From contig NIVC01000086.1 of NCBI GenBank assembly GCA_002269645.1, positions 8,755 through 72,754 of the forward strand: 64,000 nt of DNA, read 5' to 3'. The notes beneath the pieces were generated by a model. That model did not search any database, had not been told where the DNA came from, and saw only the letters and a list, made by a program, of their open reading frames with translations. Of the stretch, positions 36,047 to 64,000 are shown piece by piece. Numbering within the stretch: position 1 is the first letter of the stretch; each line of letters starts with the position of its first letter. The position numbers and the translations under genes were made by a program. Origin of the DNA: Macrostomum lignano. Lineage: Eukaryota.

Positions 36047-36048
36047 CC

Positions 36049-42824: not shown

Positions 42825-43601
<777 letters not shown>

Positions 43602-45061: not shown

Positions 45062-48000
45062 TTAGTGCTTCTTCACACGATGCTTGGTGCGCTTTACGCG
45101 CAAACGCCAAGCATGCCGCCCAGCTCGGCGATTGAACCACGTCACCTTGCGCACACTCTTCGGCGCCGGCCTCTTCCAGACGGTCTTTCGCCACTTCTTG
45201 AAGTGTACGCGCCAACTAGAACCATAGCGCCGACGATATTTTCGCTTGACGTAGAACCACTTCCAGTTGGACCCGTATCGGTGCTTAAACCATGCGATGC
45301 TGTACTTCCTTAAACGATGCTTCGTGCGCTTTACGTGCAAACGCCAAGCATGCCGCCCAGATCGGCGATTGAACCACGTGACCTTGCGCACATTCTTTGG
45401 GCTCGGCTTCTTCCAAACGCGTTTCAGCCACTTCCTAAAGTGCACGCGCCACTTGCGACCGTAGCGTCGACGGTAGACCACTCGGGTGTAGTACCAGCGC
45501 CACTTGCGACCGTAGTGTCTCTTGTACCAGGTGACCTTGTGCAGGACGCGACGCTTCGGCGACGGCTTCTTCCAGACCGTTTTCACCCACCTTCGGAAGT
45601 GAGATCTCCATTTAATTCCAAATTTTCGATGATAAACCAGCCGAGTGTAATACCACCTCCAATTCTTAGGATAATGCTTTTTAAACCATCTCAAAGTGTG
45701 CACTATAACGTGCGGACGTTTTGGAGCCGGACGCTTCCACGTGTGCTTTTCCCATAGTTTAAAATGCACCCTCCACTTCCGACCAAATCGATGCTGATAA
45801 ACAACTCGAGTGTAGTACCAACGCCAGTTTGTTCCATAACGTCGCTTGAACCAACCAACCTTGTGCAGGACGCGACGCTTCGGTGACGGCTTCTTCCACA
45901 CTCGCTTCAGCCACTTCCTAAAGTGCACGCGCCACTTGCGACCGTAGCGTCGACGGTAAACCACTCGGGTGTAGTACCAGCGCCACTTGCGACCGTAGTG
46001 TCTCTTGTACCAGGTGACCTTGTGCAGGACGCGACGCTTCGGTGACGGCTTCTTCCACACTCTCTTCAGCCACTTCCTAAAGTGCACGCGCCACTTGCGA
46101 CCGTAGCGTCGACGGTAGACCACTCGGGTGTAGTACCAGCGCCACTTGCGACCGTAGTGTCTCTTGTACCAGGTGACCTTGTGCAGGACGCGACGCTTCG
46201 GCGACGGCTTCTTCCAGACCGTTTTCACCCACCTTCGGAAGTGAGATCTCCATTTAATTCCAAATTTTCGATGATAAACCAGCCGAGTGTAATACCACCT
46301 CCAATTCTTAGGATAATGCTTTTTAAACCATCTCAAAGTGTGCACTATAACGTGCGGACGTTTTGGAGCCGGACGCTTCCACGTGTGCTTTTCCCATAGT
46401 TTAAAATGCACCCTCCACTTCCGACCAAATCGATGCTGATAAACAACTCGAGTGTAGTACCAACGCCAGTTTGTTCCATAACGTCGCTTGAACCAACCAA
46501 CCTTGTGCAGGACGCGACGCTTCGGTGACGGCTTCTTCCACACTCGCTTCAGCCACTTCCTAAAGTGCACGCGCCACTTGCGACCGTAGCGTCGACGGTA
46601 GACCACTCGGGTGTAGTACCAGCGCCACTTGCGACCGTAGTGTCTCTTGTACCAGGTGACCTTGTGCAGGACGCGACGCTTCGGTGACGGCTTCTTCCAC
46701 ACTCGCTTCAGCCACTTCCTAAAGTGCACGCGCCACTTGCGACCGTAGCGTCGACGGTAGACCACTCGGGTGTAGTACCAGCGCCACTTGCGACCGTAGT
46801 GTCTCTTGTACCAGGTGACCTTGTGCAGGACGCGACGCTTCGGTGACGGCTTCTTCCACACTCGCTTCAGCCACTTCCTAAAGTGCACGCGCCACTTGCG
46901 ACCGTAGCGTCGACGGTAGACCACTCGGGTGTAGTACCAGCGCCACTTGCGACCGTAGTGTCTCTTGTACCAGGTGACCTTGTGCAGGACGCGACGCTTC
47001 GGTGACGGCTTCTTCCACACTCGCTTCAGCCACTTCCTAAAGTGCACGCGCCACTTGCGACCGTAGCGTCGACGGTAGACCACTCGGGTGTAGTACCAGC
47101 GCCACTTGCGACCGTAGTGTCTCTTGTACCAGGTGACCTTGTGCAGGACGCGACGCTTCGGTGACGGCTTCTTCCACACTCTCTTCAGCCACTTCCTAAA
47201 GTGCACGCGCCACTTGCGACCGTAGCGTCGACGGTAGACCACTCGGGTGTAGTACCAGCGCCACTTGCGACCGTAGTGTCTCTTGTACCAGGTGACCTTG
47301 TGCAGGACGCGAAGCTTCGGTGACGGCTTCTTCCACACTCTCTTCAGCCACTTCCTAAAGTGCACGCGCCACTTGCGACCGTAGCGTCGACGGTAGACCA
47401 CTCGGGTGTAGTACCAGCGCCACTTGCGACCGTAGTGTCTCTTGTACCAGGTGACCTTGTGCAGGACGCGACGCTTCGGTGACGGCTTCTTCCACACTCG
47501 CTTCAGCCACTTCCTAAAGTGCACGCGCCACTTGCGACCGTAGCGTCGACGGTAGACCACTCGGGTGTAGTACCAGCGCCACTTGCGACCGTAGTGTCTC
47601 TTGTACCAGGTGACCTTGTGCAGGACGCGACGCTTCGGTGACGGCTTCTTCCACACTCGCTTCAGCCACTTCCTAAAGTGCACGCGCCACTTGCGACCGT
47701 AGCGTCGACGGTAGACCACTCGGGTGTAGTACCAGCGCCACTTGCGACCGTAGTGTCTCTTGTACCAGGTGACCTTGTGCAGGACGCGACGCTTCGGTGA
47801 CGGCTTCTTCCACACTCGCTTCAGCCACTTCCTAAAGTGCACGCGCCACTTGCGACCGTAGCGTCGACGGTAGACCACTCGGGTGTAGTACCAGCGCCAC
47901 TTGCGACCGTAGTGTCTCTTGTACCAGGTGACCTTGTGCAGGACGCGACGCTTCGGTGACGGCTTCTTCCACACTCGCTTCAGCCACTTCCTAAAGTGCA

Positions 48001-51000
48001 CGCGCCACTTGCGACCGTAGCGTCGACGGTAGACCACTCGGGTGTAGTACCAGCGCCACTTGCGACCGTAGTGTCTCTTGTACCAGGTGACCTTGTGCAG
48101 GACGCGACGCTTCGGCGACGGCTTCTTCCAGACCGTTTTCACCCACCTTCGGAAGTGAGATCTCCATTTAATTCCAAATTTTCGATGATAAACCAGCCGA
48201 GTGTAATACCACCTCCAATTCTTAGGATAATGCTTTTTAAACCATCTCAAAGTGTGCACTATAACGTGCGGACGTTTTGGAGCCGGACGCTTCCACGTGT
48301 GCTTTTCCCATAGTTTAAAATGCACCCTCCACTTCCGACCAAATCGATGCTGATAAACAACTCGAGTGTAGTACCAACGCCAGTTTGTTCCGTAACGTCG
48401 CTTGAACCAACCAACCTTGTGCAGGACGCGACGCTTCGGTGACGGCTTCTTCCACACTCTCTTCAGCCACTTCCTAAAGTGCACGCGCCACTTGCGACCG
48501 TAGCGTCGATGGTAGACCACTCGGGTGTAGTACCAGCGCCACTTGCGACCGTAGTGTCTCTTGTACCAGGTGACCTTGTGCAGGACGCGACGCTTCGGTG
48601 ACGGCTTCTTCCACACTCTCTTCAGCCACTTCCTAAAGTGCACGCGCCACTTGCGACCGTAGCGTCGACGGTAGACCACTCGGGTGTAGTACCAGCGCCA
48701 CTTGCGACCGTAGTGTCTCTTGTACCAGGTGACCTTGTGCAGGACGCGACGCTTCGGTGACGGCTTCTTCCACACTCTCTTCAGCCACTTCCTAAAGTGC
48801 ACGCGCCACTTGCGACCGTAGCGTCGACGGTAGACCACTCGGGTGTAGTACCAGCCCCACTTGCGACCGTAGTGTCTCTTGTACCAGGTGACCTTGTGCA
48901 GGACGCGACGCTTCGGTGACGGCTTCTTCCACACTCGCTTCAGCCACTTCCTAAAGTGCACGCGCCACTTGCGACCGTAGCGTCGACGGTAGACCACTCG
49001 GGTGTAGTACCAGCGCCACTTGCGACCGTAGTGTCTCTTGTACCAGGTGACCTTGTGCAGGACGCGACGCTTCGGTGACGGCTTCTTCCACACTCGCTTC
49101 AGCCACTTCCTAAAGTGCACGCGCCACTTGCGACCGTAGCGTCGACGGTAGACCACTCGGGTGTAGTACCAGCGCCACTTGCGACCGTAGTGTCTCTTGT
49201 ACCAGGTGACCTTGTGCAGGACGCGACGCTTCGGTGACGGCTTCTTCCACACTCTCTTCAGCCACTTCCTAAAGTGCACGCGCCACTTGCGACCGTAGCG
49301 TCGACGGTAGACCACTCGGGTGTAGTACCAGCGCCACTTGCGACCGTAGTGTCTCTTGTACCAGGTGACCTTGTGCAGGACGCGACGCTTCGGTGACGGC
49401 TTCTTCCACACTCGCTTCAGCCACTTCCTAAAGTGCACGCGCCACTTGCGACCGTAGCGTCGACGGTAGACCACTCGGGTGTAGTACCAGCGCCACTTGC
49501 GACCGTAGTGTCTCTTGTACCAGGTGACCTTGTGCAGGACGCGACGCTTCGGTGACGGCTTCTTCCACACTCGCTTCAGCCACTTCCTAAAGTGCACGCG
49601 CCACTTGCGACCGTAGCGTCGACGGTAGACCACTCGGGTGTAGTACCAGCGCCACTTGCGACCGTAGTGTCTCTTGTACCAGGTGACCTTGTGCAGGACG
49701 CGACGCTTCGGTGACGGCTTCTTCCACACTCGCTTCAGCCACTTCCTAAAGTGCACGCGCCACTTGCGACCGTAGCGTCGACGGTAGACCACTCGGGTGT
49801 AGTACCAGCGCCACTTGCGACCGTAGTGTCTCTTGTACCAGGTGACCTTGTGCAGGACGCGACGCTTCGGTGACGGCTTCTTCCACACTCGCTTCAGCCA
49901 CTTCCTAAAATGCACGCGCCACTTGCGACCGTAGCGTCGACGGTAGACCACTCGGGTGTAGTACCAGCGCCACTTGCGACCGTAGTGTCTCTTGTACCAG
50001 GTGACCTTGTGCAGGACGCGACGCTTCGGTGACGGCTTCTTCCACACTCGCTTCAGCCACTTCCTAAAGTGCACGCGCCACTTGCGACCGTAGCGTCGAC
50101 GGTAGACCACTCGGGTGTAGTACCAGCGCCACTTGTGACCGTAGTGTCTCTTGTACCAGGTGACCTTGTGCAGGACGCGACGCTTCGGTGACGGCTTCTT
50201 CCACACTCGCTTCAGCCACTTCCTAAAGTGCACGCGCCACTTGCGACCGTAGCGTCGATGGTAGACCACTCGGGTGTAGTACCAGCGCCACTTGCGACCG
50301 TAGTGTCTCTTGTACCAGGTGACCTTGTGCAGGACGCGACGCTTCGGTGACGGCTTCTTCCACACTCTCTTCAGCCACTTCCTAAAGTGCACGCGCCACT
50401 TGCGACCGTAGCGTCGATGGTAGACCACTCGGGTGTAGTACCAGCGCCACTTGCGACCGTAGTGTCTCTTGTACCAGGTGACCTTGTGCAGGACGCGACG
50501 CTTCGGTGACGGCTTCTTCCACACTCGCTTCAGCCACTTCCTAAAGTGCACGCGCCACTTGCGACCGTAGCGTCGACGGTAGACCACTCGGGTGTAGTAC
50601 CAGCGCCACTTGCGACCGTAGTGTCTTTTGTACCAGGTGACCTTGTGCAGGACGCGACGCTTCGGTGACGGCTTCTTCCACACTCGCTTCAGCCACTTCC
50701 TAAAGTGCACGCGCCACTTGCGACCGTAGCGTCGACGGTAGACCACTCGGGTGTAGTACCAGCGCCACTTGCGACCGTAGTGTCTCTTGTACCAGGTGAC
50801 CTTGTGCAGGACGCGACGCTTCGGTGACGGCTTCTTCCACACTCTCTTCAGCCACTTTCTAAAGTGCACGCGCCACTTGCGACCGTAGCGTCGACGGTAG
50901 ACCACTCGGGTGTAGTACCAGCGCCACTTGCGACCGTAGTGTCTCTTGTACCAGGTGACCTTGTGCAGGACGCGACGCTTCGGTGACGGCTTCTTCCACA

Positions 51001-54000
51001 CTCGCTTCAGCCACTTCCTAAAGTGCACGCGCCACTTGCGACCGTAGCGTCGACGGTAGACCACTCGGGTGTAGTACCAGCGCCACTTGCGACCGTAGTG
51101 TCTCTTGTACCAGGTGACCTTGTGCAGGACGCGACGCTTCGGTGACGGCTTCTTCCACACTCGCTTCAGCCACTTCCTAAAGTGCACGCGCCACTTGCGA
51201 CCGTAGCGTCGACGGTAGACCACTCGGGTGTAGTACCAGCGCCACTTGCGACCGTAGTGTCTCTTGTACCAGGTGACCTTGTGCAGGACGCGACGCTTCG
51301 GTGACGGCTTCTTCCACACTCTCTTCAGCCACTTCCTAAAGTGCACGCGCCACTTGCGACCGTAGCGTCGACGGTAGACCACTCGGGTGTAGTACCAGCG
51401 CCACTTGCGACCGTAGTGTCTCTTGTACCAGGTGACCTTGTGCAGGACGCGACGCTTCGGTGACGGCTTCTTCCACACTCGCTTCAGCCACTTCCTAAAG
51501 TGCACGCGCCACTTGCGACCGTAGCGTCGACGGTAGACCACTCGGGTGTAGTACCAGCGCCACTTGCGACCGTAGTGTCTCTTGTACCAGGTGACCTTGT
51601 GCAGGACGCGACGCTTCGGCGACGGCTTCTTCCAGACCGTTTTCACCCACCTTCGGAAGTGAGATCTCCATTTAATTCCAAATTTTCGATGATAAACCAG
51701 CCGAGTGTAATACCACCTCCAATTCTTAGGATAATGCTTTTTAAACCATCTCAAAGTGTGCACTATAACGTGCGGACGTTTTGGAGCCGGACGCTTCCAC
51801 GTGTGCTTTTCCCATAGTTTAAAATGCACCCTCCACTTCCGACCAAATCGATGCTGATAAACAACTCGAGTGTAGTACCAACGCCAGTTTGTTCCATAAC
51901 GTCGCTTGAACCAACCAACCTTGTGCAGGACGCGACGCTTCGGTGACGGCTTCTTCCACACTCGCTTCAGCCACTTCCTAAAGTGCACGCGCCACTTGCG
52001 ACCGTAGCGTCGACGGTAAACCACTCGGGTGTAGTACCAGCGCCACTTGCGACCGTAGTGTCTCTTGTACCAGGTGACCTTGTGCAGGACGCGACGCTTC
52101 GGTGACGGCTTCTTCCACACTCTCTTCAGCCACTTCCTAAAGTGCACGCGCCACTTGCGACCGTAGCGTCGACGGTAGACCACTCGGGTGTAGTACCAGC
52201 GCCACTTGCGACCGTAGTGTCTCTTGTACCAGGTGACCTTGTGCAGGACGCGACGCTTCGGCGACGGCTTCTTCCAGACCGTTTTCACCCACCTTCGGAA
52301 GTGAGATCTCCATTTAATTCCAAATTTTCGATGATAAACCAGCCGAGTGTAATACCACCTCCAATTCTTAGGATAATGCTTTTTAAACCATCTCAAAGTG
52401 TGCACTATAACGTGCGGACGTTTTGGAGCCGGACGCTTCCACGTGTGCTTTTCCCATAGTTTAAAATGCACCCTCCACTTCCGACCAAATCGATGCTGAT
52501 AAACAACTCGAGTGTAGTACCAACGCCAGTTTGTTCCATAACGTCGCTTGAACCAACCAACCTTGTGCAGGACGCGACGCTTCGGTGACGGCTTCTTCCA
52601 CACTCGCTTCAGCCACTTCCTAAAGTGCACGCGCCACTTGCGACCGTAGCGTCGACGGTAGACCACTCGGGTGTAGTACCAGCGCCACTTGCGACCGTAG
52701 TGTCTCTTGTACCAGGTGACCTTGTGCAGGACGCGACGCTTCGGTGACGGCTTCTTCCACACTCGCTTCAGCCACTTCCTAAAGTGCACGCGCCACTTGC
52801 GACCGTAGCGTCGACGGTAGACCACTCGGGTGTAGTACCAGCGCCACTTGCGACCGTAGTGTCTCTTGTACCAGGTGACCTTGTGCAGGACGCGACGCTT
52901 CGGTGACGGCTTCTTCCACACTCGCTTCAGCCACTTCCTAAAGTGCACGCGCCACTTGCGACCGTAGCGTCGACGGTAGACCACTCGGGTGTAGTACCAG
53001 CGCCACTTGCGACCGTAGTGTCTCTTGTACCAGGTGACCTTGTGCAGGACGCGACGCTTCGGTGACGGCTTCTTCCACACTCGCTTCAGCCACTTCCTAA
53101 AGTGCACGCGCCACTTGCGACCGTAGCGTCGACGGTAGACCACTCGGGTGTAGTACCAGCGCCACTTGCGACCGTAGTGTCTCTTGTACCAGGTGACCTT
53201 GTGCAGGACGCGACGCTTCGGTGACGGCTTCTTCCACACTCTCTTCAGCCACTTCCTAAAGTGCACGCGCCACTTGCGACCGTAGCGTCGACGGTAGACC
53301 ACTCGGGTGTAGTACCAGCGCCACTTGCGACCGTAGTGTCTCTTGTACCAGGTGACCTTGTGCAGGACGCGAAGCTTCGGTGACGGCTTCTTCCACACTC
53401 TCTTCAGCCACTTCCTAAAGTGCACGCGCCACTTGCGACCGTAGCGTCGACGGTAGACCACTCGGGTGTAGTACCAGCGCCACTTGCGACCGTAGTGTCT
53501 CTTGTACCAGGTGACCTTGTGCAGGACGCGACGCTTCGGTGACGGCTTCTTCCACACTCGCTTCAGCCACTTCCTAAAGTGCACGCGCCACTTGCGACCG
53601 TAGCGTCGACGGTAGACCACTCGGTGTAGTACCAGCGCCACTTGCGACCGTAGTGTCTCTTGTACCAGGTGACCTTGTGCAGGACGCGACGCTTCGGTGA
53701 CGGCTTCTTCCACACTCGCTTCAGCCACTTCCTAAAGTGCACGCGCCACTTGCGACCGTAGCGTCGACGGTAGACCACTCGGGTGTAGTACCAGCGCCAC
53801 TTGCGACCGTAGTGTCTCTTGTACCAGGTGACCTTGTGCAGGACGCGACGCTTCGGTGACGGCTTCTTCCACACTCGCTTCAGCCACTTCCTAAAGTGCA
53901 CGCGCCACTTGCGACCGTAGCGTCGACGGTAGACCACTCGGGTGTAGTACCAGCGCCACTTGCGACCGTAGTGTCTCTTGTACCAGGTGACCTTGTGCAG

Positions 54001-57000
54001 GACGCGACGCTTCGGTGACGGCTTCTTCCACACTCGCTTCAGCCACTTCCTAAAGTGCACGCGCCACTTGCGACCGTAGCGTCGACGGTAGACCACTCGG
54101 GTGTAGTACCAGCGCCACTTGCGACCGTAGTGTCTCTTGTACCAGGTGACCTTGTGCAGGACGCGACGCTTCGGCGACGGCTTCTTCCAGACCGTTTTCA
54201 CCCACCTTCGGAAGTGAGATCTCCATTTAATTCCAAATTTTCGATGATAAACCAGCCGAGTGTAATACCACCTCCAATTCTTAGGATAATGCTTTTTAAA
54301 CCATCTCAAAGTGTGCACTATAACGTGCGGACGTTTTGGAGCCGGACGCTTCCACGTGTGCTTTTCCCATAGTTTAAAATGCACCCTCCACTTCCGACCA
54401 AATCGATGCTGATAAACAACTCGAGTGTAGTACCAACGCCAGTTTGTTCCGTAACGTCGCTTGAACCAACCAACCTTGTGCAGGACGCGACGCTTCGGTG
54501 ACGGCTTCTTCCACACTCTCTTCAGCCACTTCCTAAAGTGCACGCGCCACTTGCGACCGTAGCGTCGATGGTAGACCACTCGGGTGTAGTACCAGCGCCA
54601 CTTGCGACCGTAGTGTCTCTTGTACCAGGTGACCTTGTGCAGGACGCGACGCTTCGGTGACGGCTTCTTCCACACTCGCTTCAGCCACTTCCTAAAGTGC
54701 ACGCGCCACTTGCGACCGTAGCGTCGACGGTAGACCACTCGGGTGTAGTACCAGCGCCACTTGCGACCGTAGTGTCTCTTGTACCAGGTGACCTTGTGCA
54801 GGACGCGACGCTTCGGCGACGGCTTCTTCCAGACCGTTTTCACCCACCTTCGGAAGTGAGATCTCCATTTAATTCCAAATTTTCGATGATAAACCAGCCG
54901 AGTGTAATACCACCTCCAATTCTTAGGATAATGCTTTTTAAACCATCTCAAAGTGTGCACTATAACGTGCGGACGTTTTGGAGCCGGACGCTTCCACGTG
55001 TGCTTTTCCCATAGTTTAAAATGCACCCTCCACTTCCGACCAAATCGATGCTGATAAACAACTCGAGTGTAGTACCAACGCCAGTTTGTTCCGTAACGTC
55101 GCTTGAACCAACCAACCTTGTGCAGGACGCGACGCTTCGGTGACGGCTTCTTCCACACTCTCTTCAGCCACTTCCTAAAGTGCACGCGCCACTTGCGACC
55201 GTAGCGTCGACGGTAGACCACTCGGGTGTAGTACCAGCCCCACTTGCGACCGTAGTGTCTCTTGTACCAGGTGACCTTGTGCAGGACGCGACGCTTCGGT
55301 GACGGCTTCTTCCACACTCGCTTCAGCCACTTCCTAAAGTGCACGCGCCACTTGCGACCGTAGCGTCGACGGTAGACCACTCGGGTGTAGTACCAGCGCC
55401 ACTTGCGACCGTAGTGTCTCTTGTACCAGGTGACCTTGTGCAGGACGCGACGCTTCGGTGACGGCTTCTTCCACACTCGCTTCAGCCACTTCCTAAAGTG
55501 CACGCGCCACTTGCGACCGTAGCGTCGACGGTAGACCACTCGGGTGTAGTACCAGCGCCACTTGCGACCGTAGTGTCTCTTGTACCAGGTGACCTTGTGC
55601 AGGACGCGACGCTTCGGTGACGGCTTCTTCCACACTCTCTTCAGCCACTTCCTAAAGTGCACGCGCCACTTGCGACCGTAGCGTCGACGGTAGACCACTC
55701 GGGTGTAGTACCAGCGCCACTTGCGACCGTAGTGTCTCTTGTACCAGGTGACCTTGTGCAGGACGCGACGCTTCGGTGACGGCTTCTTCCACACTCGCTT
55801 CAGCCACTTCCTAAAGTGCACGCGCCACTTGCGACCGTAGCGTCGACGGTAGACCACTCGGGTGTAGTACCAGCGCCACTTGCGACCGTAGTGTCTCTTG
55901 TACCAGGTGACCTTGTGCAGGACGCGACGCTTCGGTGACGGCTTCTTCCACACTCGCTTCAGCCACTTCCTAAAGTGCACGCGCCACTTGCGACCGTAGC
56001 GTCGACGGTAGACCACTCGGGTGTAGTACCAGCGCCACTTGCGACCGTAGTGTCTCTTGTACCAGGTGACCTTGTGCAGGACGCGACGCTTCGGTGACGG
56101 CTTCTTCCACACTCGCTTCAGCCACTTCCTAAAGTGCACGCGCCACTTGCGACCGTAGCGTCGACGGTAGACCACTCGGGTGTAGTACCAGCGCCACTTG
56201 CGACCGTAGTGTCTCTTGTACCAGGTGACCTTGTGCAGGACGCGACGCTTCGGTGACGGCTTCTTCCACACTCGCTTCAGCCACTTCCTAAAATGCACGC
56301 GCCACTTGCGACCGTAGCGTCGACGGTAGACCACTCGGGTGTAGTACCAGCGCCACTTGCGACCGTAGTGTCTCTTGTACCAGGTGACCTTGTGCAGGAC
56401 GCGACGCTTCGGTGACGGCTTCTTCCACACTCGCTTCAGCCACTTCCTAAAGTGCACGCGCCACTTGCGACCGTAGCGTCGACGGTAGACCACTCGGGTG
56501 TAGTACCAGCGCCACTTGTGACCGTAGTGTCTCTTGTACCAGGTGACCTTGTGCAGGACGCGACGCTTCGGTGACGGCTTCTTCCACACTCGCTTCAGCC
56601 ACTTCCTAAAGTGCACGCGCCACTTGCGACCGTAGCGTCGATGGTAGACCACTCGGGTGTAGTACCAGCGCCACTTGCGACCGTAGTGTCTCTTGTACCA
56701 GGTGACCTTGTGCAGGACGCGACGCTTCGGTGACGGCTTCTTCCACACTCTCTTCAGCCACTTCCTAAAGTGCACGCGCCACTTGCGACCGTAGCGTCGA
56801 TGGTAGACCACTCGGGTGTAGTACCAGCGCCACTTGCGACCGTAGTGTCTCTTGTACCAGGTGACCTTGTGCAGGACGCGACGCTTCGGTGACGGCTTCT
56901 TCCACACTCGCTTCAGCCACTTCCTAAAGTGCACGCGCCACTTGCGACCGTAGCGTCGACGGTAGACCACTCGGGTGTAGTACCAGCGCCACTTGCGACC

Positions 57001-60000
57001 GTAGTGTCTTTTGTACCAGATGACCTTGTGCAGGACGCGACGCTTCGGTGACGGCTTCTTCCACACTCGCTTCAGCCACTTCCTAAAGTGCACGCGCCAC
57101 TTGCGACCGTAGCGTCGACGGTAGACCACTCGGGTGTAGTACCAGCGCCACTTGCGACCGTAGTGTCTCTTGTACCAGGTGACCTTGTGCAGGACGCGAC
57201 GCTTCGGTGACGGCTTCTTCCACACTCTCTTCAGCCACTTTCTAAAGTGCACGCGCCACTTGCGACCGTAGCGTCGACGGTAGACCACTCGGGTGTAGTA
57301 CCAGCGCCACTTGCGACCGTAGTGTCTCTTGTACCAGGTGACCTTGTGCAGGACGCGACGCTTCGGTGACGGCTTCTTCCACACTCGCTTCAGCCACTTC
57401 CTAAAGTGCACGCGCCACTTGCGACCGTAGCGTCGACGGTAGACCACTCGGGTGTAGTACCAGCGCCACTTGCGACCGTAGTGTCTCTTGTACCAGGTGA
57501 CCTTGTGCAGGACGCGACGCTTCGGTGACGGCTTCTTCCACACTCGCTTCAGCCACTTCCTAAAGTGCACGCGCCACTTGCGACCGTAGCGTCGACGGTA
57601 GACCACTCGGGTGTAGTACCAGCGCCACTTGCGACCGTAGTGTCTCTTGTACCAGGTGACCTTGTGCAGGACGCGACGCTTCGGTGACGGCTTCTTCCAC
57701 ACTCTCTTCAGCCACTTCCTAAAGTGCACGCGCCACTTGCGACCGTAGCGTCGACGGTAGACCACTCGGGTGTAGTACCAGCGCCACTTGCGACCGTAGT
57801 GTCTCTTGTACCAGGTGACCTTGTGCAGGACGCGACGCTTCGGTGACGGCTTCTTCCACACTCGCTTCAGCCACTTCCTAAAGTGCACGCGCCACTTGCG
57901 ACCGTAGCGTCGACGGTAGACCACTCGGGTGTAGTACCAGCGCCACTTGCGACCGTAGTGTCTCTTGTACCAGGTGACCTTGTGCAGGACGCGACGCTTC
58001 GGTGACGGCTTCTTCCACACTCGCTTCAGCCACTTCCTAAAGTGCACGCGCCACTTGCGACCGTAGCGTCGACGGTAGACCACTCGGGTGTAGTACCAGC
58101 GCCACTTGCGACCGTAGTGTCTCTTGTACCAGGTGACCTTGTGCAGGACGCGACGCTTCGGTGACGGCTTCTTCCACACTCGCTTCAGCCACTTCCTAAA
58201 GTGCACGCGCCACTTGCGACCGTAGCGTCGATGGTAGACCACTCGGGTGTAGTACCAGCGCCACTTGCGACCGTAGTGTCTCTTGTACCAGGTGACCTTG
58301 TGCAGGACGCGACGCTTCGGTGACGGCTTCTTCCACACTCGCCTCAGCCACTTCCTAAAGTGCACGCGCCACTTGCGACCGTAGCGTCGACGGTAGACCA
58401 CTCGGGTGTAGTACCAGCGCCACTTGCGACCGTAGTGTCTCTTGTACCAGGTGACCTTGTGCAGGACGCGACGCTTCGGTGACGGCTTCTTCCACACTCT
58501 CTTCAGCCACTTCCTAAAGTGCACGCGCCACTTGCGACCGTAGCGTCGACGGTAGACCACTCGGGTGTAGTACCAGCGCCACTTGCGACCGTAGTGTCTC
58601 TTGTACCAGGTGACCTTGTGCAGGACGCGACGCTTCGGTGACGGCTTCTTCCACACTCGCTTCAGCCACTTCCTAAAGTGCACGCGCCACTTGCGACCGT
58701 AGCGTCGACGGTAGACCACTCGGGTGTAGTACCAGCGCCACTTGCGACCGTAGTGTCTCTTGTACCAGGTGACCTTGTGCAGGACGCGACGCTTCGGTGA
58801 CGGCTTCTTCCACACTCGCTTCAGCCACTTCCTAAAGTGCACGCGCCACTTGCGACCGTAGCGTCGACGGTAGACCACTCGGGTGTAGTACCAGCGCCAC
58901 TTGCGACCGTAGTGTCTCTTGTACCAGGTGACCTTGTGCAGGACGCGACGCTTCGGTGACGGCTTCTTCCACACTCGCTTCAGCCACTTCCTAAAGTGCA
59001 CGCGCCACTTGCGACCGTAGCGTCGACGGTAGACCACTCGGGTGTAGTACCAGCGCCACTTGCGACCGTAGTGTCTCTTGTACCAGGTGACCTTGTGCAG
59101 GACGCGACGCTTCGGTGACGGCTTCTTCCACACTCGCTTCAGCCACTTCCTAAAGTGCACGCGCCACTTGCGACCGTAGCGTCGACGGTAGACCACTCGG
59201 GTGTAGTACCAGCGCCACTTGCGACCGTAGTGTCTCTTGTACCAGGTGACCTTGTGCAGGACGCGACGCTTCGGTGACGGCTTCTTCCACACTCGCTTCA
59301 GCCACTTCCTAAAGTGCACGCGCCACTTGCGACCGTAGCGTCGACGGTAGACCACTCGGGTGTAGTACCAGCGCCACTTGCGACCGTAGTGTCTCTTGTA
59401 CCAGGTGACCTTGTGCAGGACGCGACGCTTCGGTGACGGCTTCTTCCACACTCGCTTCAGCCACTTCCTAAAGTGCACGCGCCACTTGCGACCGTAGCGT
59501 CGACGGTAGACCACTCGGGTGTAGTACCAGCGCCACTTGCGACCGTAGTGTCTCTTGTACCAGGTGACCTTGTGCAGGACGCGACGCTTCGGTGACGGCT
59601 TCTTCCACACTCGCTTCAGCCACTTCCTAAAGTGCACGCGCCACTTGCGACCGTAGCGTCGACGGTAGACCACTCGGGTGTAGTACCAGCGCCACTTGCG
59701 ACCGTAGTGTCTCTTGTACCAGGTGACCTTGTGCAGGACGCGACGCTTCGGTGACGGCTTCTTCCACACTCGCTTCAGCCACTTCCTAAAGTGCACGCGC
59801 CACTTGCGACCGTAGCGTCGACGGTAGACCACTCGGGTGTAGTACCAGCGCCACTTGTGACCGTAGTGTCTCTTGTACCAGGTTGCAGTTTTAACATGTG
59901 GTTTCCCCCTCCCGCACTCGACCTGGTATTGGAGTTGATGGTTAGTTTTTTGGTATAACGGAATCCAGGCTTTACCAGAGTTGATTTTCTTTTCCCATTC

Positions 60001-61319
60001 CTTGAACTTCGTTAGAAACGTTTTTCCGTATATTTTTCTGTAGTGCCATTTCGTGTACTTTATCAGAGCTTTCTTCTTTTTGAAGACTAGGTTATAGTAA
60101 AACCAGCGGAACATCATTTCCTTCTTGTCAGCCGACAGATCCTTGTTTAAAGCTTTCCACTCTGATAAAGCACTGCTTCCTGCCTTTTTGTACCGGAAGT
60201 ACCATCGCATAAACTCATTAACATAGGCCTGGCTTCCTTCCTTATGCTTTTGCTTGATCTTCCATTTCATCCAGCTGTAAATCCAAGTCGTAGGTCGGTA
60301 TTTTTTAAAATACCACTTTACATAGTGCGGCTCCCATTTCTTGCCGTACTTTTTCTTGAATGGCAACTTCTCCCACTCGGAGAACCAGTTTTTGCCGTAT
60401 TTTTTCTTCATTTGATATTTCTCGTAGTGCGTTCTCCACTTCGAACCGAACTTCTTTTTAAACCAGCGAATGCTGTGTACATGAACAGTCACAGAACTGG
60501 TAGTAGTGTAGGCTAGTTGCGTTTCCATCAGTTTGTAATATTTCATCCAGTGCTTGTTTGTATTAAACCTGTTCAGCCACAACTTGTACTTTGGTAGGAA
60601 CTTTTTGCCGAACCGCTTCCTGTAGAACCACTTGGTGTATTTGATCAGTGCCTGCTTTTTCTGGAATACTAAATTGTAGTAAAACCAGCGGAACTTCTTC
60701 TCGCCTTCGTCCTCAGACAGGTCTTTGGTAGCGGATTTCCACGCCTCAAGCGCTTTGTCACCCTTTTTAGTGTACTTGAAGTACCACCTCATGAACTCGT
60801 CAACGTACGCCTTGCTGCCCTCTTTGTGCTTTTGTCTAAACTGCCACTTCTTCCAGCTGTAAATCCAGGTGGCCCCTCGGTATTTCCTGAAATACCACTT
60901 CACATAGTGGGGCTCCCACTTCTTCCCGTATTTCTTCTTAAATCGCAACTTCTCCCATTCCGAGAACCAGTCCTTGCCGTACTTCTTCTTCATCAAATGC
61001 TGCTCGTAGTGGATTTTCCACTTCAAACCGTAGAGCTTCTTGTACTTCCAAATTAGGAAGTGCTTCTCCCAAGCTGAGCCGAACTTCTTCTTGAAAGTAG
61101 CTCGCATTCTGTCTTCCGGAGAAACCGGGGAGCCAGTCTTGCTCTCGGTCCGGTGCAAGTAGGTCTCGAACTTGGTAGAGTCGCCATATTTATTGGTAAA
61201 CCAGGTCTTCAAATGCGTCTGCCAGCTGCCGGGGTAAAGAGTCTTGTAGTGCTTGAGGACTATGTAGAACTCCCACGCTTCGCCATAGATCTTCTTGTAG
61301 TACTGGATAGTTGAGTGGC
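45062..61319 (-). CDS. Giant terminal exon (~16.26 kb, ~5,420 aa) of a VWA-domain, Arg/Lys/Trp/Tyr-rich tandem-repeat protein
   Basis: ORFs 53563-61359 and 45062-53728 encode the same repeat and are offset by one missing G at 53623-53624 (tcggtg versus tcgggtg in other units). Splice acceptor ctctttag|GC at 61321-61320 (phase 1); stop TAA at 45064-45062. Apart from that one base the frame stays open over ~14.5 kb of repeats. The 53-aa unit is RRVLHKVTWYKRHYGRKWRWYYTRVVYRRRYGRKWRVHFRKWLKRVWKKPSPK (159 bp). Confidence 0.85.
45400..59880 (-). repeat. Coding tandem array: ~77 x 159-bp A units plus 7 x 324-bp B modules
   Basis: The 159-bp period is directly visible (e.g. cagccacttc at 58981 and 59140). 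B modules (HKVGWFKRRYGTNW...KTVWKKPSPK) lie at about 45554, 46196, 48110, 51614, 52256, 54169 and 54811. The unit count is estimated from length. Confidence 0.95.
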
Positions 61320-61402
61320 CTAAAGAGATCAATATTGGATTTTTATTTGCTGACAGCACATGTAGGCATTATTGAACAGCAAATAAATGCTTATATCCTT
61401 AC

Positions 61403-64000
61403 TGTACGACTTAAGCAGGGTAGTCAGGAATGTCGTGTGCTCCAAGGTTTTGTCAGTGGATGTCTCCTTGCCGCCTTCTTTCACGTTGAAGATGCCCCTA
61501 AAAAGGTTTCAATGTGCGGCCACAGTAATCTGGATCTCGGATAGGGGAATTGGAATTGTGCTTAAGCAGTCCTTGTGTGCAGCCTTTGAGAGCGTGTGCT
61601 TAGCGTGATAGCAGGCACCCTTTAGAATTGACCTTGACTGCGGTGCCCACAGCCCCCCTCATGCGCATAAGGTTGGAATTGGAATTTTAAATTCGGAATT
61701 TTGAATAAAATTTTACATCATCCCTTTGATTTCCGATGGGCCGAGAAAAAATCGATTTTGGTAAATAGGAAATACTCAGAAATTTTAGTGCAGAAAAAAT
61801 CTACATTCTGTCTGAAGGAATAGTTGAATAACTTGACGTCATCGATCACTACCAGTTTAAAAATTACCGTTTGTAGAAACAAAATTCAGGGAAACGTTTC
61901 ATTTCATGTTTGCTCGAACACAGCGAAAATCCGAACCCGGTAGCTGACCCTGCCACCCTACCCGAACCCGGTAGCTGACCCTGACACCCTACCCCGAACC
62001 CGGTAGCTGACCCTGACACCCTACCCGAACCCGGTAGCTGACCCTGACACCCTACCCCGAACCCGGTAGCTGACCCTGACACCCTACCCCGAACCCGGTA
62101 GCTGACCCTGACACCCTACTCCGAACCCGGTAGCTGACCCTGACACCCTACCCCGAACCCGGTAGCTGACCCTGACCCCTACCCCGAACCCGGTAGCTGA
62201 CCCTGACACCCTACCCGAACCCGGTAGCTGACCCTGCCACCCTACCCGAACCCAGTAGCTGACCCTGACACCCTACCCCAAACCGGTAGCTGACCCTGAC
62301 ACCCTACCCCGAACCCAGTAGCTGACCCTGACCCCTACCCCGAACCCGGTGGCTGACCCTGCCACCCTACTCCGAACCCGGTAGCTGACCCTGCCACCCT
62401 ACCCCGAACCCGGTACCTGACCCTGACATCCTACCCCGAACCCGGTAGCTGACCCTGACACCCTACCCCGAACCGGTAGCTGACCCTGACACCCTACTCC
62501 GAACCCGGTAGCTGACCCTGACACCCTACCCCGAACCCGGTAGCTGACCCTGACACCCTACCCGAACCCGGTAGCTGACCTGACACCCTACTCCGAACCC
62601 GGTAGCTGACCCTGACACCCTACCCCGAACCCGGTAGCTGACCCTGACACCCTACCCCGAACCCGGTAGCTGACCCTGACACCCTACCCTGAACCCGGTA
62701 CTCACGAAGACGAGTCCACAACAATCTCGGAAAGGCTAATCCACTCTTTCATGAGTTTGTGCCGCCACTGCTCTGTCTTGGCCGTGTTGGCGTCCCGCCC
62801 GGAGCTCAGCAGCATGACAATCCTCGCGTCCGGAGGACTTGCCAAACTTTGCAACTCGTTGTAGGCCGCCTGGATGCCGACGTAATCGTAAACTTTGCCG
62901 CTCCGCTTGGCGTGGCGACTCTTGATAGCTCGATTTGGAGCCTGGCCAAGATCCGTCAAGCGACCAGCCCTGGAGAGCGATTTGAATCAGTGAGCTTCAC
63001 TTAGCCAGCGGTACAGCTGCATGCAGTACATCGGGCTGCTGGACAGCTTATAAGACTGTCTATAAACCTCACTATTCATGAATTTGATGCTGATTAATTG
63101 GTTTCTGTGTGTTTAGAGTTCATGTAAGTTTTTGGGTCCAGTACCGGGTTCGGAGTAGGATGTCAGGTCAGCTACCAGGTTTGGAGTAGGGTGTCAAGGT
63201 CAGGTACCGGGTTCAGAATGGGTGTCGGTCAGGTACCGGTCAGAATGGTTGTCAAGGTCAGGTACCGGATTCAGAATGGTTGTCAAGGTCAGGTACCGGG
63301 TTCAGAATGGTTGTCAATGTCAGGTACCGGGTTCAGAATGGTTGTCAAGGTCAGGTACCGCGGATTCAAGAATGGTTGTCAAGGTCAGGTACCGGGTTCA
63401 GAATGGTTGTCAATGTCAGGTACCGGGTTCAGAATGGTGTGTCAAGGTCAGGTACCGGGTTCAGAATGGTTGTCAAGGTCAGGTACCGGGTTCAGAATGG
63501 TTTCGGTCAGGTACCGGGTTCAGAATGGTTGTCAGGGTCAGGTACCGGGTTCAGGGTAGGGTGTCAGCGTCAAGTACCGGGTTCAGAAATGGTTGTCAGG
63601 GTCAGGTACCGGGTTCAGGACAGGGTGTCAGGGTCAGGTACCGGGTTCAGAATGGTTGTCAAGGTCAGGTACCGGGTTTCAGGACAGGGTGTCAGGGTCA
63701 GGTACCGCGGTTCAGGACAGGTGTCAGGGTCAGCGCGGCGGGTTCAGGACAGGGTGTCAGGGTCAGCGTACCGGGTTCAGAATGGTTGTCAAGGTCAGGT
63801 ACCGGGTTCAGAATGGTTGTCAGGGTCAGGTGCCAGGTTCAGGGGTGGGTGTCGGTCAGGTTCCAGTTCAGGGTGGATGTCCAGGGTCAGGTTGCCGGAT
63901 CTCAGCCGTCCTCACCTGCTTCAGCGACACAATCGTATAAGGACGATCCGTGTACTCCACGAAGCCAATTTTAATCTTCTTGGTCTTCACCGGTAGCTTC
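61403..64000 (-). CDS. Upstream exons of the same giant gene, encoding a von Willebrand factor A-like domain (5' end beyond the window)
   Basis: Exon 64000-63916 encodes KLPVKTKKIKIGFVEYTDRPYTIVSLKQ, then donor GTGAG; it resembles VWA strands B-C (RVGLVQYSD.....F.L). A possible micro-exon lies at 63038-63001. Exon 62969-62706 encodes ...GKVYDYVGIQAAYNELQSLASPPDARIVMLLSSGRDAN...KLMKEWISLSEIVVDSS, then donor GTGAGT; it resembles VWA helix/strand D/helix/strand E. Exon 61497-61403 encodes GIFNVKEGG...TTFLTTLLKSY, then donor GTAAGG. Phases 2/2 and 1/1 join these last two exons to the giant exon. Confidence 0.75.
61930..62700. repeat. 31/32-bp intronic minisatellite (ccgaacccggtagctgaccctgacaccctac)
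   Basis: About 24 copies, beginning immediately at the 62705 splice donor. Confidence 0.95.
63135..63900. repeat. ~31-bp intronic minisatellite (gtcaggtaccgggttcagaatggttgtcaag / agggtgtcagggtcaggtaccgggttcagg), inverted relative of 61930-62700
   Basis: The reverse complement of the left array unit is gtagggtgtcagggtcagctaccgggttcgg, nearly identical to units here. Confidence 0.92.

What the first reader, a model, noticed from the sequence alone, without database searches (positions are those of the whole stretch)
45062..64000. Giant (>5,500 aa) VWA-domain protein with a ~4,800-aa polycationic-aromatic repeat tail: candidate adhesive or gland-secreted biomaterial
Seen: spliced VWA-like exons run in frame into one ~16.3-kb exon. 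The dominant 53-aa unit contains 13 R, 9 K, 6 W, 6 Y, 3 H and 6 V, and no D, E, C, N, Q, M, A or I (41.5% K+R; 24.5% W+Y+F). My spliced model gives ~5,580 codons in the window alone. Established: VWA domains are common in extracellular and adhesive proteins; cationic residues next to Tyr/DOPA/Trp drive cation-pi cohesion in mussel foot proteins; the flatworm adhesion protein Mlig-ap1 is known to be huge and K/R-rich. Inference: this is a secreted structural protein (temporary adhesive, egg cement/shell or rhabdite component). I recognise no family with this Trp/Tyr-rich repeat, and I see no EGF run between the VWA and the repeats, so it may be distinct from ap1.
Basis: partly seen in the sequence, partly recalled or inferred. 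Interest (0 to 1): 0.92.

Follow-up and report, generated by a model that had tools for sequence, protein, structure and literature searches.

The report
Giant secreted cationic tryptophan-rich repeat protein
This stretch of the flatworm Macrostomum lignano genome holds a real but uncharacterised gene for a huge (about 5,700 residue, 0.76 MDa) secreted protein, built almost entirely of a 53-residue unit rich in arginine, lysine, tryptophan and tyrosine; it is most likely a gland-made extracellular material, but where it is made and what it does are unknown.

Summary
On the minus strand, a 159-bp (53-aa) unit repeats about 91 times (45404-59883) inside one exon (61319-45062). The frame is not continuous as assembled. 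One 1-bp deletion in a C3 run (53623-53624) splits the exon ORF, and the VWA exon (62969-62706) carries four 1-bp indels. The window is Mlig_3_7 contig NIVC01000086.1, and position 64000 is the contig end, where indels cluster. Sister contigs have a clean VWA exon, and one has a fully open 2,876-codon giant exon, so these breaks are probably assembly errors.

Coding is well supported: synonymous sites between unit variants are saturated while amino acids are conserved, and RNA-based gene models cover both ends. Sister contigs supply a signal peptide, an acidic Ser-rich leader and a divergent VWA-like domain without a MIDAS motif. It is not Mlig-ap1 or ap2: no EGF/vWD/lectin domains, one Cys, and no probe primer maps. 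No homologue was found outside M. lignano apart from weak VWA matches.

Database entries exist only as partial, collapsed or misnamed hypothetical proteins. I found no expression data. Best reading: a secreted polycationic-aromatic cohesive material. Tissue and function remain inferred.

The parts
63916..64000 (-). Exon A, cut by the contig end. It encodes ...KLPVKTKKIKIGFVEYTDRPYTIVSLKQ (VWA helix 1 to strand 3), followed by donor GTGAGG.
   Evidence: tblastn of P0001 residues 123-150 at 100% identity. Sequence read directly. Window position 64000 is the end of contig NIVC01000086.1.
62706..62969 (-). Exon B, the rest of the VWA-like domain (GWSLDRILARLQ...PRIVMLLSSGRDANT...IVVDSS). In the window it carries four 1-bp indels (three deletions, one insertion) that break the frame.
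   Evidence: Alignment with L001 and L002, where the exon is one clean frame. Indels are concentrated in the last 2 kb of the contig. VWA matches.
61403..61497 (-). Exon C, a short linker exon (GIFNVKEGGKETSTDKTLEHTTFLTTLLKSY).
   Evidence: tblastn of P0001. Splice junctions read.
45062..61319 (-). Exon D, the giant coding exon: 16,258 nt, or 5,418 codons after one base is restored, with stop TAA at 45064-45062.
   Evidence: ORF list. Repaired translation without stops. The sister-contig equivalent is fully open.
59884..61319 (-). The 'unique' 478-aa region. It is two ~205-aa diverged copies of a K-rich aromatic helical repeat built on a ~17-aa motif, KKxYGxxWxxH[YF]xxW. pI is 10.1 and it is distantly homologous to the array.
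   Evidence: Translation. Composition. BLASTP to the array with compositional adjustment gives E = 2e-7, with YGxxW motifs in register. AF2 predicts helices here at pLDDT 70-90 for residues 270-400 of P0001.
45404..59883 (-). Tandem array of the 159-bp / 53-aa unit, about 91 copies. 76 are of the main type, and 60 of those encode the identical peptide.
   Evidence: TRF. Unit census.
53623..53624 (-). Frame-breaking 1-bp deletion in a C3 homopolymer (TACTACACCCGAG becomes TACTACACCGAG). Probably an assembly error.
   Evidence: Alignment with the neighbouring unit. Coordinates. The same lesion occurs at five other places in L001 and two in L002, and none in L004.
54790..55113 (-). One of seven identical copies of a diverged unit pair (vA 55 aa + vB 53 aa). 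The others are at 54471-54148, 52558-52235, 51916-51593, 48412-48089, 46498-46175 and 45856-45533. They mark a higher-order repeat of ~852 aa.
   Evidence: Positions. Against the main unit: 62-72% aa identity, 65-69% nt identity, pS 0.74-0.76, pN 0.19-0.24.
45065..45403 (-). C-terminal degenerate units (NVRKVTWFNRRSGRHAWRLHVKRTKHRLRKYSIAWFKHRYGSNWKWFYVKRKYRRRYGSSWRVHF...KRTKHRVKKH) ending at the stop codon.
   Evidence: Translation. Identical to the C-terminus of database model PAA91463.1 / P0006. dN/dS against the main unit is about 0.29.

Best explanation
This is a real, lineage-restricted Macrostomum lignano gene for a giant secreted protein.

Shown:
- A signal peptide, an acidic Ser/Thr-rich leader (pI 4.6) and a divergent VWA-like domain lacking the MIDAS motif. 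These 5' exons lie only partly in the window.
- One ~16.3-kb exon follows. It encodes 478 aa of diverged K-rich aromatic repeats and then about 91 copies of a 53-aa unit with 41.5% Arg+Lys and 24.5% Trp+Tyr+Phe.
- The mature product is about 5,660 aa and 0.76 MDa, with net charge about +2,000 and a single Cys.
- The frame breaks in this window are most likely consensus errors of a long-read contig end and of a homopolymer.

Inferred mechanism:
- The protein is made in a gland cell and packed with polyanionic counter-molecules.
- After secretion it acts as a cohesive or condensing extracellular material. The dense Arg/Lys binds sulfated or carboxylated glycans and surfaces. Neighbouring Trp/Tyr adds cation-pi and aromatic cohesion, and possibly Tyr oxidation cross-links to Lys/His.
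- The VWA-like head provides a protein-protein anchoring site.
- Functionally it would resemble the polycationic cohesive proteins of flatworm glue (the Mlig-ap1 KR flanks, ap3) without being homologous to them.
- The producing tissue (adhesive, cement/shell, rhabdite or prostate gland) is unknown.
For: Coding and under selection:
- The repaired exon has 5,418 codons without a stop.
- Sister contig L004 has an uninterrupted 2,876-codon exon with 42.8 units.
- Diverged unit types differ at 31-42% of nucleotides. pS is 0.61-0.94 (saturated) while pN is only 0.19-0.34.
- Among 76 young main-type units there are 6 synonymous and 6 non-synonymous variant states, against about 35 and 124 sites respectively.
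- The 'unique' region aligns to the array in register, E = 2e-7.

Transcribed, at least at both ends:
- The BOX15 models Mlig034012.g1, Mlig004350.g1 and Mlig025189.g1 match the gene's 5' exons, first and last units and stop.
- Mlig_3_7 gene models are built from RNA-seq and de novo transcripts (PMC5730564).

Secreted:
- Signal peptide plus AxA-type cleavage site in P0001 and P0007.

VWA-like head:
- Pfam VWA E = 0.0015.
- The only non-Macrostomum hits of 1.84e9 representatives are multi-VWA proteins, E = 5e-5 and 4e-4.
- Top PDB hits are collagen VI alpha3 (9.4e-7) and vWF A1.
- UniProt names A0A267EG50 a 'VWFA domain-containing protein'.

Frame breaks are probably errors:
- The window is NIVC01000086.1 up to its very end.
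- 33-35 one-base indels but only 5-6 substitutions against the sister contigs, all within the last ~2 kb.
- The exon D lesion is a homopolymer undercall that recurs at other sites in other contigs.

Chemistry:
- Composition, pI about 12, net charge +2,042 and 1 Cys.

Precedent:
- Polycationic regions of flatworm glue proteins act as cohesives. They are blocked by heparin, and release is blocked by added cations (PMC6410801; PMC9229212).
Against: - No expression, localisation, proteomic or knock-down data were found for this gene.
- The sequences RKWRWYY, YGRKW and KKKYGKKW are absent from the held supplements of the glue paper, which include footprint and tail mass-spectrometry tables. Trypsin would shred this protein, so that absence is weak evidence.
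- Transcript models cover only the ends and a few units. Full-length expression of the array is unproven, and the 958-aa model treats most of the array as an 'intron'.
- The VWA match is below Pfam's threshold and covers only profile positions 20-120 of 174. The MIDAS DxSxS motif reads DKNAI, and the AF2 model of that region is unreliable at pLDDT below 50.
- The window copy as assembled has five frame-breaking indels and could be a decaying copy.
- No orthologue outside M. lignano was available to test conservation.
Confidence: 0.5

Rival explanations
1. Polyprotein precursor of small cationic Trp/Arg-rich defence peptides (antimicrobial or anti-predator). The tandem identical units would be cut at dibasic sites in the secretory pathway and released in mucus or rhabdites.
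For: - Signal peptide.
- About 91 near-identical units.
- 10 dibasic pairs per unit.
- RW-rich motifs such as RKWRWYY and WRVHFRKWLKRVW resemble known Arg/Trp antimicrobial peptides (from my own knowledge).
- Unit residues 22-43 have a high helical hydrophobic moment, reached by only 3% of shuffles.
- AF2 predicts helices.
Against: - There are no acidic spacers or pro-regions between units to neutralise charge, and no defined processing site. No RX[KR]R furin motif is present, and dibasic pairs are spread all over the unit, so cleavage would not give one defined peptide.
- The amphipathicity signal is modest over the whole unit: 5-12% of shuffles reach the mean moment.
- A VWA head and a 478-aa diverged repeat region are not typical of peptide precursors.
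Confidence: 0.15
2. Quinone-tanned eggshell or egg-cement precursor. Tyr is oxidised to DOPA/quinone and cross-linked to the abundant Lys/His, as in flatworm eggshell proteins. This is a specific sub-case of the biomaterial reading, listed separately because it predicts a different tissue and chemistry.
For: - The array has Tyr 10.6%, Lys 16.6% and His 6.3%, so all three partners of quinone tanning are abundant.
- It is secreted.
- A secreted tyrosinase is gland-specific in another flatworm's glue system (PMC9229212).
- Known trematode eggshell precursors are Tyr/Lys/His/Gly-rich (from my own knowledge).
Against: - No ovary, oocyte or cement-gland expression data were found, and the gene IDs are absent from the compendium of published M. 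lignano in situ patterns.
- Arg 23% and Trp 11% are not features of known eggshell precursors, and Gly is low at 3.8%.
Confidence: 0.12
3. The copy in this window is a decaying duplicate (pseudogene) of a functional gene that lives on sister contigs. M. lignano carries large recent duplications.
For: - There are five frame-breaking indels in the window copy: four in exon B and one in exon D.
- At least four related contigs exist.
- The genome is highly redundant (PMC5730564).
Against: - Against the sister contigs there are about 35 one-base indels but only 5-6 substitutions. The indels are confined to the terminal ~2 kb of the contig and mostly lie in short homopolymers, which is the signature of low-coverage long-read consensus rather than decay.
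- The other 16.2 kb of exon D has no stop and no other shift.
- The same homopolymer lesion is scattered at different sites in L001 and L002.
Confidence: 0.08
4. A non-coding 159-bp satellite that merely happens to be open in one frame and was absorbed into gene models.
For: - The period is divisible by 3.
- A random 53-codon unit is open in at least one of six frames fairly often, roughly 40% by my estimate.
- The window is full of other mini- and microsatellites.
Against: - pS is saturated while pN is low between unit types, and amino-acid identity is at or above nucleotide identity in most comparisons.
- The array is in frame with, and homologous to, the upstream diverged coding repeats.
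- It ends in degenerate units followed by a stop that matches a transcript-based model.
- Frame and length changes between unit types come in multiples of 3, for example +6 nt in vA.
Confidence: 0.02
5. An intracellular polyanion (DNA/RNA) binder, such as a protamine-like sperm or granule protein.
For: Extreme Arg/Lys content and pI about 12.
Against: - N-terminal signal peptide and an extracellular-type VWA domain.
- Its size is about 1,000 times that of protamines.
- 22% Trp+Tyr is not a nuclear basic-protein trait.
Confidence: 0.03

Closest known systems
Mlig-ap1, the cohesive glue protein of M. lignano, specifically its KR regions A-C (Wunderer et al. 2019, PMC6410801)
   Same: Same species. 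Giant and secreted, with thousands of residues of extremely cationic repeats. It is proposed to work by electrostatic binding to polyanions and the glycocalyx.
   Different: - ap1 has a Cys-rich core (C-lectin, vWD-C8-TIL, 17 EGF). Its KR regions are G/R/K-type low complexity, for example SRKPRRKNRKSRKP.
- This protein has a VWA-like head, no core domains and 1 Cys. Its repeat has 22% Trp+Tyr and 11% Val and is predicted helical.
- None of the 18 ap1 or 12 ap2 probe primers map here.
Flatworm adhesion protein 3 (Mile-ap3, Tmed-ap3; PMC9229212)
   Same: A stand-alone secreted protein of about 3,700 aa with a signal peptide that is almost entirely a polycationic repeat. Short-read assemblers also fragment it.
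   Different: - In ap3, five residues (K, R, G, H, S) make up 88% of the protein, with a 'GRKHS' motif and essentially no aromatics.
- Here G is 3.8%, S is 2% and W+Y+F is 24%. The protein also has a VWA-like domain.
- No sequence similarity was detectable in database searches.
Mussel foot proteins with paired cationic and aromatic residues (mfp-1/-3/-5; Perna Pvfp-1 with modified Trp). From my own knowledge, not tested here.
   Same: Secreted tandem-repeat proteins in which Lys/Arg sit next to Tyr/DOPA or Trp. Cohesion comes from cation-pi contacts and coacervation.
   Different: Mussel proteins are 5-110 kDa with deca- or short peptide repeats, depend on DOPA, and often contain Cys or EGF domains. 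This protein is about 760 kDa, has a 53-aa unit, and Arg exceeds Lys. Any modification of its Tyr or Trp is unknown.
VWA domains of collagen VI alpha3 and von Willebrand factor A1
   Same: These are the best sequence matches of the N-terminal domain (E = 9.4e-7 and about 0.05 in the PDB). The helix 1 to strand 2/3 block is conserved: kkyimdalkklpv..ikigfveytd.
   Different: The match is sub-threshold in Pfam (19.2 against 23.8 bits) and covers only profile positions 20-120 of 174. The MIDAS motif DxSxS is replaced by DKNAI.
Arg/Trp-rich antimicrobial peptides (indolicidin, tritrpticin, lactoferricin-type RW motifs). From my own knowledge.
   Same: Local motifs (RKWRWYY, FRKWLKRVWKK) and a cationic amphipathic segment.
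   Different: Those are 13-25-residue peptides made from small precursors with pro-regions. Here there are no spacers or defined cleavage sites.

Membership tests
VWA domain (Pfam PF00092) | Sequence score at or above Pfam's gathering threshold (23.8 bits) | tested here: not met
   16.6 bits for the window's exons and 19.2 bits (E = 0.0015) for the clean sister-copy sequence.
VWA domain (Pfam PF00092) | Best independent database matches are bona fide VWA domains | tested here: met
   phmmer against 1.84e9 representatives: the only non-Macrostomum hits (E = 5e-5 and 4e-4) carry 4 and 10 VWA domains. The top 16 of 17 PDB hits are VWA domains of collagen VI or vWF.
VWA domain (Pfam PF00092) | MIDAS metal-binding motif DxSxS after strand 1 | tested here: not met
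   The sequence reads LVLAIDKNAISKG, that is D-K-N-A-I. Many matrix-type A domains also lack a working MIDAS, so this does not exclude the fold.
VWA domain (Pfam PF00092) | Complete ~175-residue alpha/beta Rossmann-like fold | tested here: inconclusive
   The Pfam alignment covers profile positions 20-120 of 174. The single-sequence AF2 model has pLDDT below 50 across this region.
Mlig-ap1 / Mlig-ap2 (M. lignano glue proteins) | Cys-rich domain core: C-lectin, vWD-C8-TIL and 17 EGF (ap1), or vWD, TIL, LDLr and TSP-1 with 221/255-aa repeats (ap2) | tested here: not met
   No Pfam domain in the 493 aa before the array or in the C-terminal 479 aa. One Cys in the whole protein. Architectures taken from PMC6410801.
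Mlig-ap1 / Mlig-ap2 (M. lignano glue proteins) | Identity with the published transcripts (probe and dsRNA primers of Table S2) | tested here: not met
   0 of 30 primers match the window or the sister loci L001-L005 with up to 2 mismatches.
Mlig-ap1 / Mlig-ap2 (M. lignano glue proteins) | Expression in adhesive gland cells, presence in footprints, non-adhesive RNAi phenotype | not testable with these tools
   No expression data for this gene were found.
Flatworm ap3-type polycationic cohesive | Signal peptide plus a multi-thousand-residue polycationic repeat that makes up most of the protein | tested here: met
   Signal peptide in the sister-copy models. Array of 4,940 aa with 39.6% K+R, pI 12.
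Flatworm ap3-type polycationic cohesive | G/R/K(/H/S) low-complexity composition ('GRK' or 'GRKHS' repeats) | tested here: not met
   G 3.8%, S 2.0%, W 11.3%, Y 10.6% and V 10.9% in the array, against 88% K+R+G+H+S in Tmed-ap3.
Flatworm ap3-type polycationic cohesive | Sequence homology to Mile-ap3 or Tmed-ap3 | not tested
Database searches with the array and the head returned only M. lignano entries.
Multi-copy antimicrobial peptide precursor | Peptide units separated by acidic or neutral spacers, with defined convertase sites | tested here: not met
   No D or E in the unit, no spacers, no RX[KR]R motif, and 10 scattered dibasic pairs per unit.

The most novel reading that the evidence does not exclude
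A previously unrecognised class of animal secreted biomaterial. It would be a Cys-free protein of about 0.76 MDa with a charge of +2,000, whose 53-aa units form Pro-punctuated amphipathic helices with a Trp/Tyr stripe. It would condense with polyanions through cation-pi contacts and constitute a distinct gland product in macrostomid flatworms (for example a rhabdite, cement or second glue matrix), evolved independently of ap1, ap2 and ap3. Repeat number would differ two-fold (43 against 91 units) between duplicated genome copies.
Probability: 0.35. Interest if true: 0.75.

Novelty: new variant of a known kind. Interest (0 to 1): 0.6.

Why it matters
If the full-length product is made, it would be one of the most extreme cation-plus-aromatic proteins known: about 2,200 Arg/Lys and about 1,200 Trp/Tyr in one chain, with no disulfides. 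It occurs in a transgenic, RNAi-amenable model animal whose glue system is already a reference for temporary adhesion.

It would offer a natural, genetically tractable test of cation-pi-driven cohesion and coacervation that relies on Trp rather than DOPA. It could also be a missing component of flatworm secretions (glue, rhabdites, egg attachment).

There is a practical lesson too. Short-read transcriptomes and draft long-read assemblies hide such genes. Here one gene is split into a 709-aa partial model, a 368-aa model, a 398-aa partial model, a collapsed 958-aa model and a 4,094-aa model misnamed as a reverse-transcriptase protein.

Tried and rejected
- **Gene IDs in the literature.** Full-text search for Mlig034012 found nothing. 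All three IDs (Mlig034012, Mlig004350, Mlig025189) were searched in the supplements of Brand 2020 (PMC7336406) and in the only files held for the aging paper (PMC5946080). Subsets were searched in Grudniewska 2018 (PMC5816591; Mlig034012 only) and Wudarski 2017 (PMC5730564; Mlig034012 and Mlig025189). There were no occurrences. The Brand 2020 positional table was cut when stored, but its complete ISH compendium (file 16) lacks the IDs. PMC10786194 holds no supplements.
- **Unit peptides in the glue paper.** The three unit peptide strings and all three gene IDs were searched in the glue paper's supplements, including MS tables. None was found.
- **Other literature searches.** Searches for an M. 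lignano single-cell atlas, for rhabdite protein composition and for Macrostomum VWA proteins returned nothing relevant.
- **Homology searches.** Searches with the diverged region, the C-terminal array and the whole 709-aa model found only M. lignano entries plus two weak VWA proteins. No orthologue-based conservation test was therefore possible.
- **Pfam on the repeats.** Nothing was found; a CUTL hit at E = 0.57 is noise.
- **AF2 without an alignment.** The head model has pLDDT 53 and the 6-unit model pLDDT 64 with pTM 0.21. Only 'mostly helical, broken at KKPSPK' is usable, and only weakly. I did not run fold searches, because the VWA region was below pLDDT 50.
- **Global Fourier analysis of hydrophobicity.** This was uninformative on a 5-degree grid for a periodic sequence. 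I replaced it with a windowed hydrophobic-moment test.
- **Non-coding satellite reading.** Considered and rejected.
- **Real pseudogenisation of this copy.** Considered and judged unlikely.

Full report
**What the window is**

The diverged part of the gene matches Macrostomum lignano proteins at 93-99% identity. Loci fetched through those proteins are byte-identical to the reverse complement of the window. L005 equals window 64000-50004, and L003 equals window 56741-35062. The window is therefore positions 8755-72754 of contig NIVC01000086.1 in the Mlig_3_7 assembly (GCA_002269645.1), and window position 64000 is the physical end of that contig. The gene lies on the minus strand and runs off the contig. 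Its first exons exist only on sister contigs: L001 = NIVC01001672, L002 = NIVC01002000 and L004 = NIVC01002152.

**Checking the observation**

Tandem Repeats Finder reports a 159-bp unit x 90.8 copies at 45404-59883, with 90% matches.

The mechanical ORF list shows two long minus-strand ORFs in different frames: 61359..53563 (2,598 aa) and 53728..45062 (2,888 aa). Aligning the junction with the preceding unit shows a single missing C in a CCC run, TACTACACCCGAG to TACTACACCGAG. On the + strand this is GG at 53623-53624.

With that base restored, the exon from the acceptor (61319; first full codon at 61317) to the last sense codon (45065) translates to 5,418 residues without a stop. The product of this exon alone is 732 kDa with pI about 12.

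The array contains 76 main-type units. Sixty of them encode the identical peptide, from 7 DNA versions. Seven identical copies of a diverged unit pair (vA+vB) mark a higher-order repeat. Degenerate units lead to the TAA stop at 45064-45062.

**Upstream exons**

tblastn of the database model, together with direct reading, gives these exons, all with canonical GT/AG junctions:

| Exon | Window coordinates |
|---|---|
| A | 64000-63916 |
| B | 62969-62706 |
| C | 61497-61403 |
| D | 61319-45062 |

In the window, exon B differs from both sister contigs by three 1-bp deletions and one 1-bp insertion. In the sister contigs it is one clean frame. Across 64000-59884 the window differs from L001 and L002 by 35-37 one-base indels but only 5-6 substitutions. 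Against L002, every indel lies at or above 61964, that is in the last ~2 kb of the contig.

This pattern, mostly in short homopolymers and next to a contig end, is what low-coverage long-read consensus produces. The same CCC-to-CC lesion appears at five other sites in L001 and two in L002. L001 and L002 have many frame switches, whereas L004 has none. L004 carries an uninterrupted ORF of 2,876 codons with 42.8 units.

I conclude that the frame breaks in the window are most likely assembly errors. A privately decaying copy cannot be excluded without the raw reads.

**Is it coding, or a satellite with an accidental frame?**

An open frame through a homogenised array whose period is divisible by three is not strong evidence by itself. 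I tested three stronger lines.

1. The main unit, variants vA and vB, and a C-terminal unit differ at 31-42% of nucleotides. The proportion of synonymous differences is 0.61-0.94, which is saturated, while non-synonymous differences are only 0.19-0.34. Amino-acid identity is at or above nucleotide identity in most comparisons. Length differences come in whole codons.
2. Among the 76 young main-type units there are 6 synonymous and 6 non-synonymous variant states, against roughly 35 synonymous and 124 non-synonymous sites. The numbers are small but point the same way.
3. The so-called unique 478 aa upstream of the array aligns to the array with composition-adjusted BLASTP at E = 2e-7, with the YGxxW motifs in register. 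The whole exon is therefore one repeat family, older and more diverged at the N-terminal end.

On transcription: the GenBank models on these contigs match this gene's 5' exons, first and last units and stop codon. The Mlig_3_7 annotation was built from RNA-seq and de novo transcripts (PMC5730564). The ends are therefore transcribed. The middle of the array has not been shown in RNA. The 958-aa model (Mlig004350.g1) contains only two units against 43 in its own contig, which is the expected collapse of a short-read transcript.

**The protein**

Reading from the sister-copy models, the parts are:

- a signal peptide, MRLGGIAPLYATAVLLLIVALAPTATA|KRE;
- an acidic Ser/Thr-rich leader, residues 28-96, pI 4.6;
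- a VWA-like domain, roughly residues 97-240;
- a short linker;
- the giant exon.

The evidence on the VWA domain is mixed but leans positive:

- Pfam scores it below threshold, at 19.2 against 23.8 bits, covering profile positions 20-120 of 174.
- An exhaustive phmmer search of 1.84 billion representatives returns, outside M. lignano, only two proteins (E = 5e-5 and 4e-4). They contain 4 and 10 true VWA domains.
- The best PDB matches are collagen VI alpha3 (9.4e-7) and vWF A1.
- UniProt's automatic annotation also says 'VWFA domain-containing'.
- The MIDAS DxSxS motif is replaced by DKNAI.

Combining the sister-copy 5' exons with the repaired window exon gives 5,689 aa. The mature form is 5,662 aa and 759 kDa, with net K+R-D-E of about +2,042, 333 His and one Cys. 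The 958-aa model has no N-glycosylation sequons.

Single-sequence AlphaFold models are of low confidence. They consistently predict long helices, interrupted at KKPSPK in each unit. Unit residues 22-43 have a helical hydrophobic moment reached by only 3% of shuffles, but the signal over the whole unit is modest.

**Comparison with known proteins**

Mlig-ap1 has KR regions flanking a Cys-rich core of lectin, vWD-C8-TIL and 17 EGF domains. Mlig-ap2 has vWD, TIL, LDLr and TSP-1 domains with repeats of 221 and 255 aa (PMC6410801). Neither architecture is present here. None of the 30 published ap1/ap2 primers map to the window or to any sister locus.

The ap1 flanks, and the stand-alone ap3 of other flatworms, are G/R/K(/H/S) low-complexity sequences. 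K+R+G+H+S makes up 88% of Tmed-ap3 (PMC9229212). This array has 3.8% G and 24% aromatic residues.

The protein therefore resembles ap3-type cohesives in being giant, secreted and polycationic, and plausibly works like them. It fails the compositional and architectural criteria for membership. The similarity to mussel cation-aromatic adhesives and to Arg/Trp antimicrobial peptides rests on my own knowledge and was not tested.

**Mechanism**

Shown:
- it is a coding gene under protein-level constraint;
- it has a secretory signal;
- it has a VWA-like head;
- it has extreme cationic-aromatic chemistry;
- it has no disulfide capacity.

Inferred:
- storage with polyanions in gland granules;
- after release, cohesion or condensation by electrostatic binding to sulfated or carboxylated glycans;
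- reinforcement by cation-pi and aromatic contacts;
- possible oxidative Tyr cross-linking to Lys/His;
- the VWA head acting as an anchoring module.

The precedent is that heparin blocks attachment, and added cations block release, in the M. lignano glue system.

The main rivals are a peptide polyprecursor, which is disfavoured by the lack of spacers and defined sites, and an eggshell or cement tanning precursor, which is compatible with the Y/K/H content but has no tissue data. I could not find any expression, in situ or proteomic record for the three gene IDs.

**Novelty and score**

The sequence is already public, but only as fragments: PAA61749/PAA65232 (709 aa, partial), an unnamed 368-aa model, PAA91463 (398 aa, partial), PAA60436 / A0A267EG50 (958 aa, collapsed) and A0A1I8IPI2 (4,094 aa, misnamed as a reverse-transcriptase protein). 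To my knowledge, and in the searched literature, nobody has described it.

It is best classed as a new variant of a known kind: giant secreted polycationic repeat proteins of flatworm glands, and more broadly cation-aromatic marine biomaterials. Its chemistry is unusual, being Trp-rich, Arg-dominated, Cys-free and probably helical.

Interest is moderate to high (0.6). The molecule is striking and testable in a tractable model, but its function is entirely inferred.

Noticed in passing
window 61931-62700 and 63141-63842: The two introns flanking VWA exon B are filled with 32-bp and 31-bp minisatellites that are inverted copies of each other, with arms up to 174 nt at 78-85% complementarity. In a pre-mRNA they could pair and loop out exon B, favouring exon skipping or back-splicing. 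They may also explain why the assembly consensus is poor here.
   Followed up: partly
window 64000 (= end of contig NIVC01000086.1); L004 14880-21692; L001 from about 26200: Array length differs between assembled copies: 14.5 kb (about 91 units) in the window, and 6.8 kb (42.8 units) in NIVC01002152.1 with both flanks intact. The NIVC01001672.1 copy runs into a gap of Ns, and NIVC01002000.1 ends inside the array. This is either real copy-number divergence between duplicated chromosomes or assembly collapse.
   Followed up: partly
window 46741-45062 and 61107-60004: On this contig GenBank annotates two separate partial or short genes that are really pieces of one gene: Mlig025189.g1 (398 aa) and an unnamed 368-aa model. 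The 398-aa model skips 483 bp, which is 3 units plus 6 nt, as a false intron.
   Followed up: yes
window ~5714-8155 (+), possibly from ~1138: A nuclear hormone receptor gene. The zf-C4 DNA-binding exon scores E = 9e-14 and the ligand-binding domain exon scores E = 1e-12. A long (TGTC)n-type microsatellite at about 5.9-6.9 kb lies between them and generates spurious Cys/Leu/Ser/Val ORFs.
   Followed up: partly
window 23702-26368 (+): The proteasome ubiquitin receptor Rpn13/ADRM1 gene: Pru domain E = 1.5e-36 and UCH-binding C-terminal domain E = 3.8e-28.
   Followed up: partly
window 34500-35929 (-): A rhodopsin-type / Srw-like 7TM receptor gene in two adjacent ORFs, E = 4.8e-22 and 2.3e-11. It is followed at 35922-36470 by a long poly-Leu/poly-Val-coding trinucleotide repeat.
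   Followed up: partly
window 40000-42207, 42827-43601, and many sites in 1-40000: The window is packed with mini- and microsatellites, each giving long spurious ORFs in several frames. Examples are a 23-bp unit x 96 copies and an 8-bp TGTCTGTC unit x 97 copies. This agrees with the report that tandem and simple repeats make up 15% of this genome (PMC5730564).
   Followed up: no
L001, L002, L004 upstream of the gene (locus coordinates 1 to about 4076): In all three sister contigs the upstream neighbour is an LLGL / WD40 beta-propeller gene, so the four contigs are duplicated copies of one chromosomal region.
   Followed up: no
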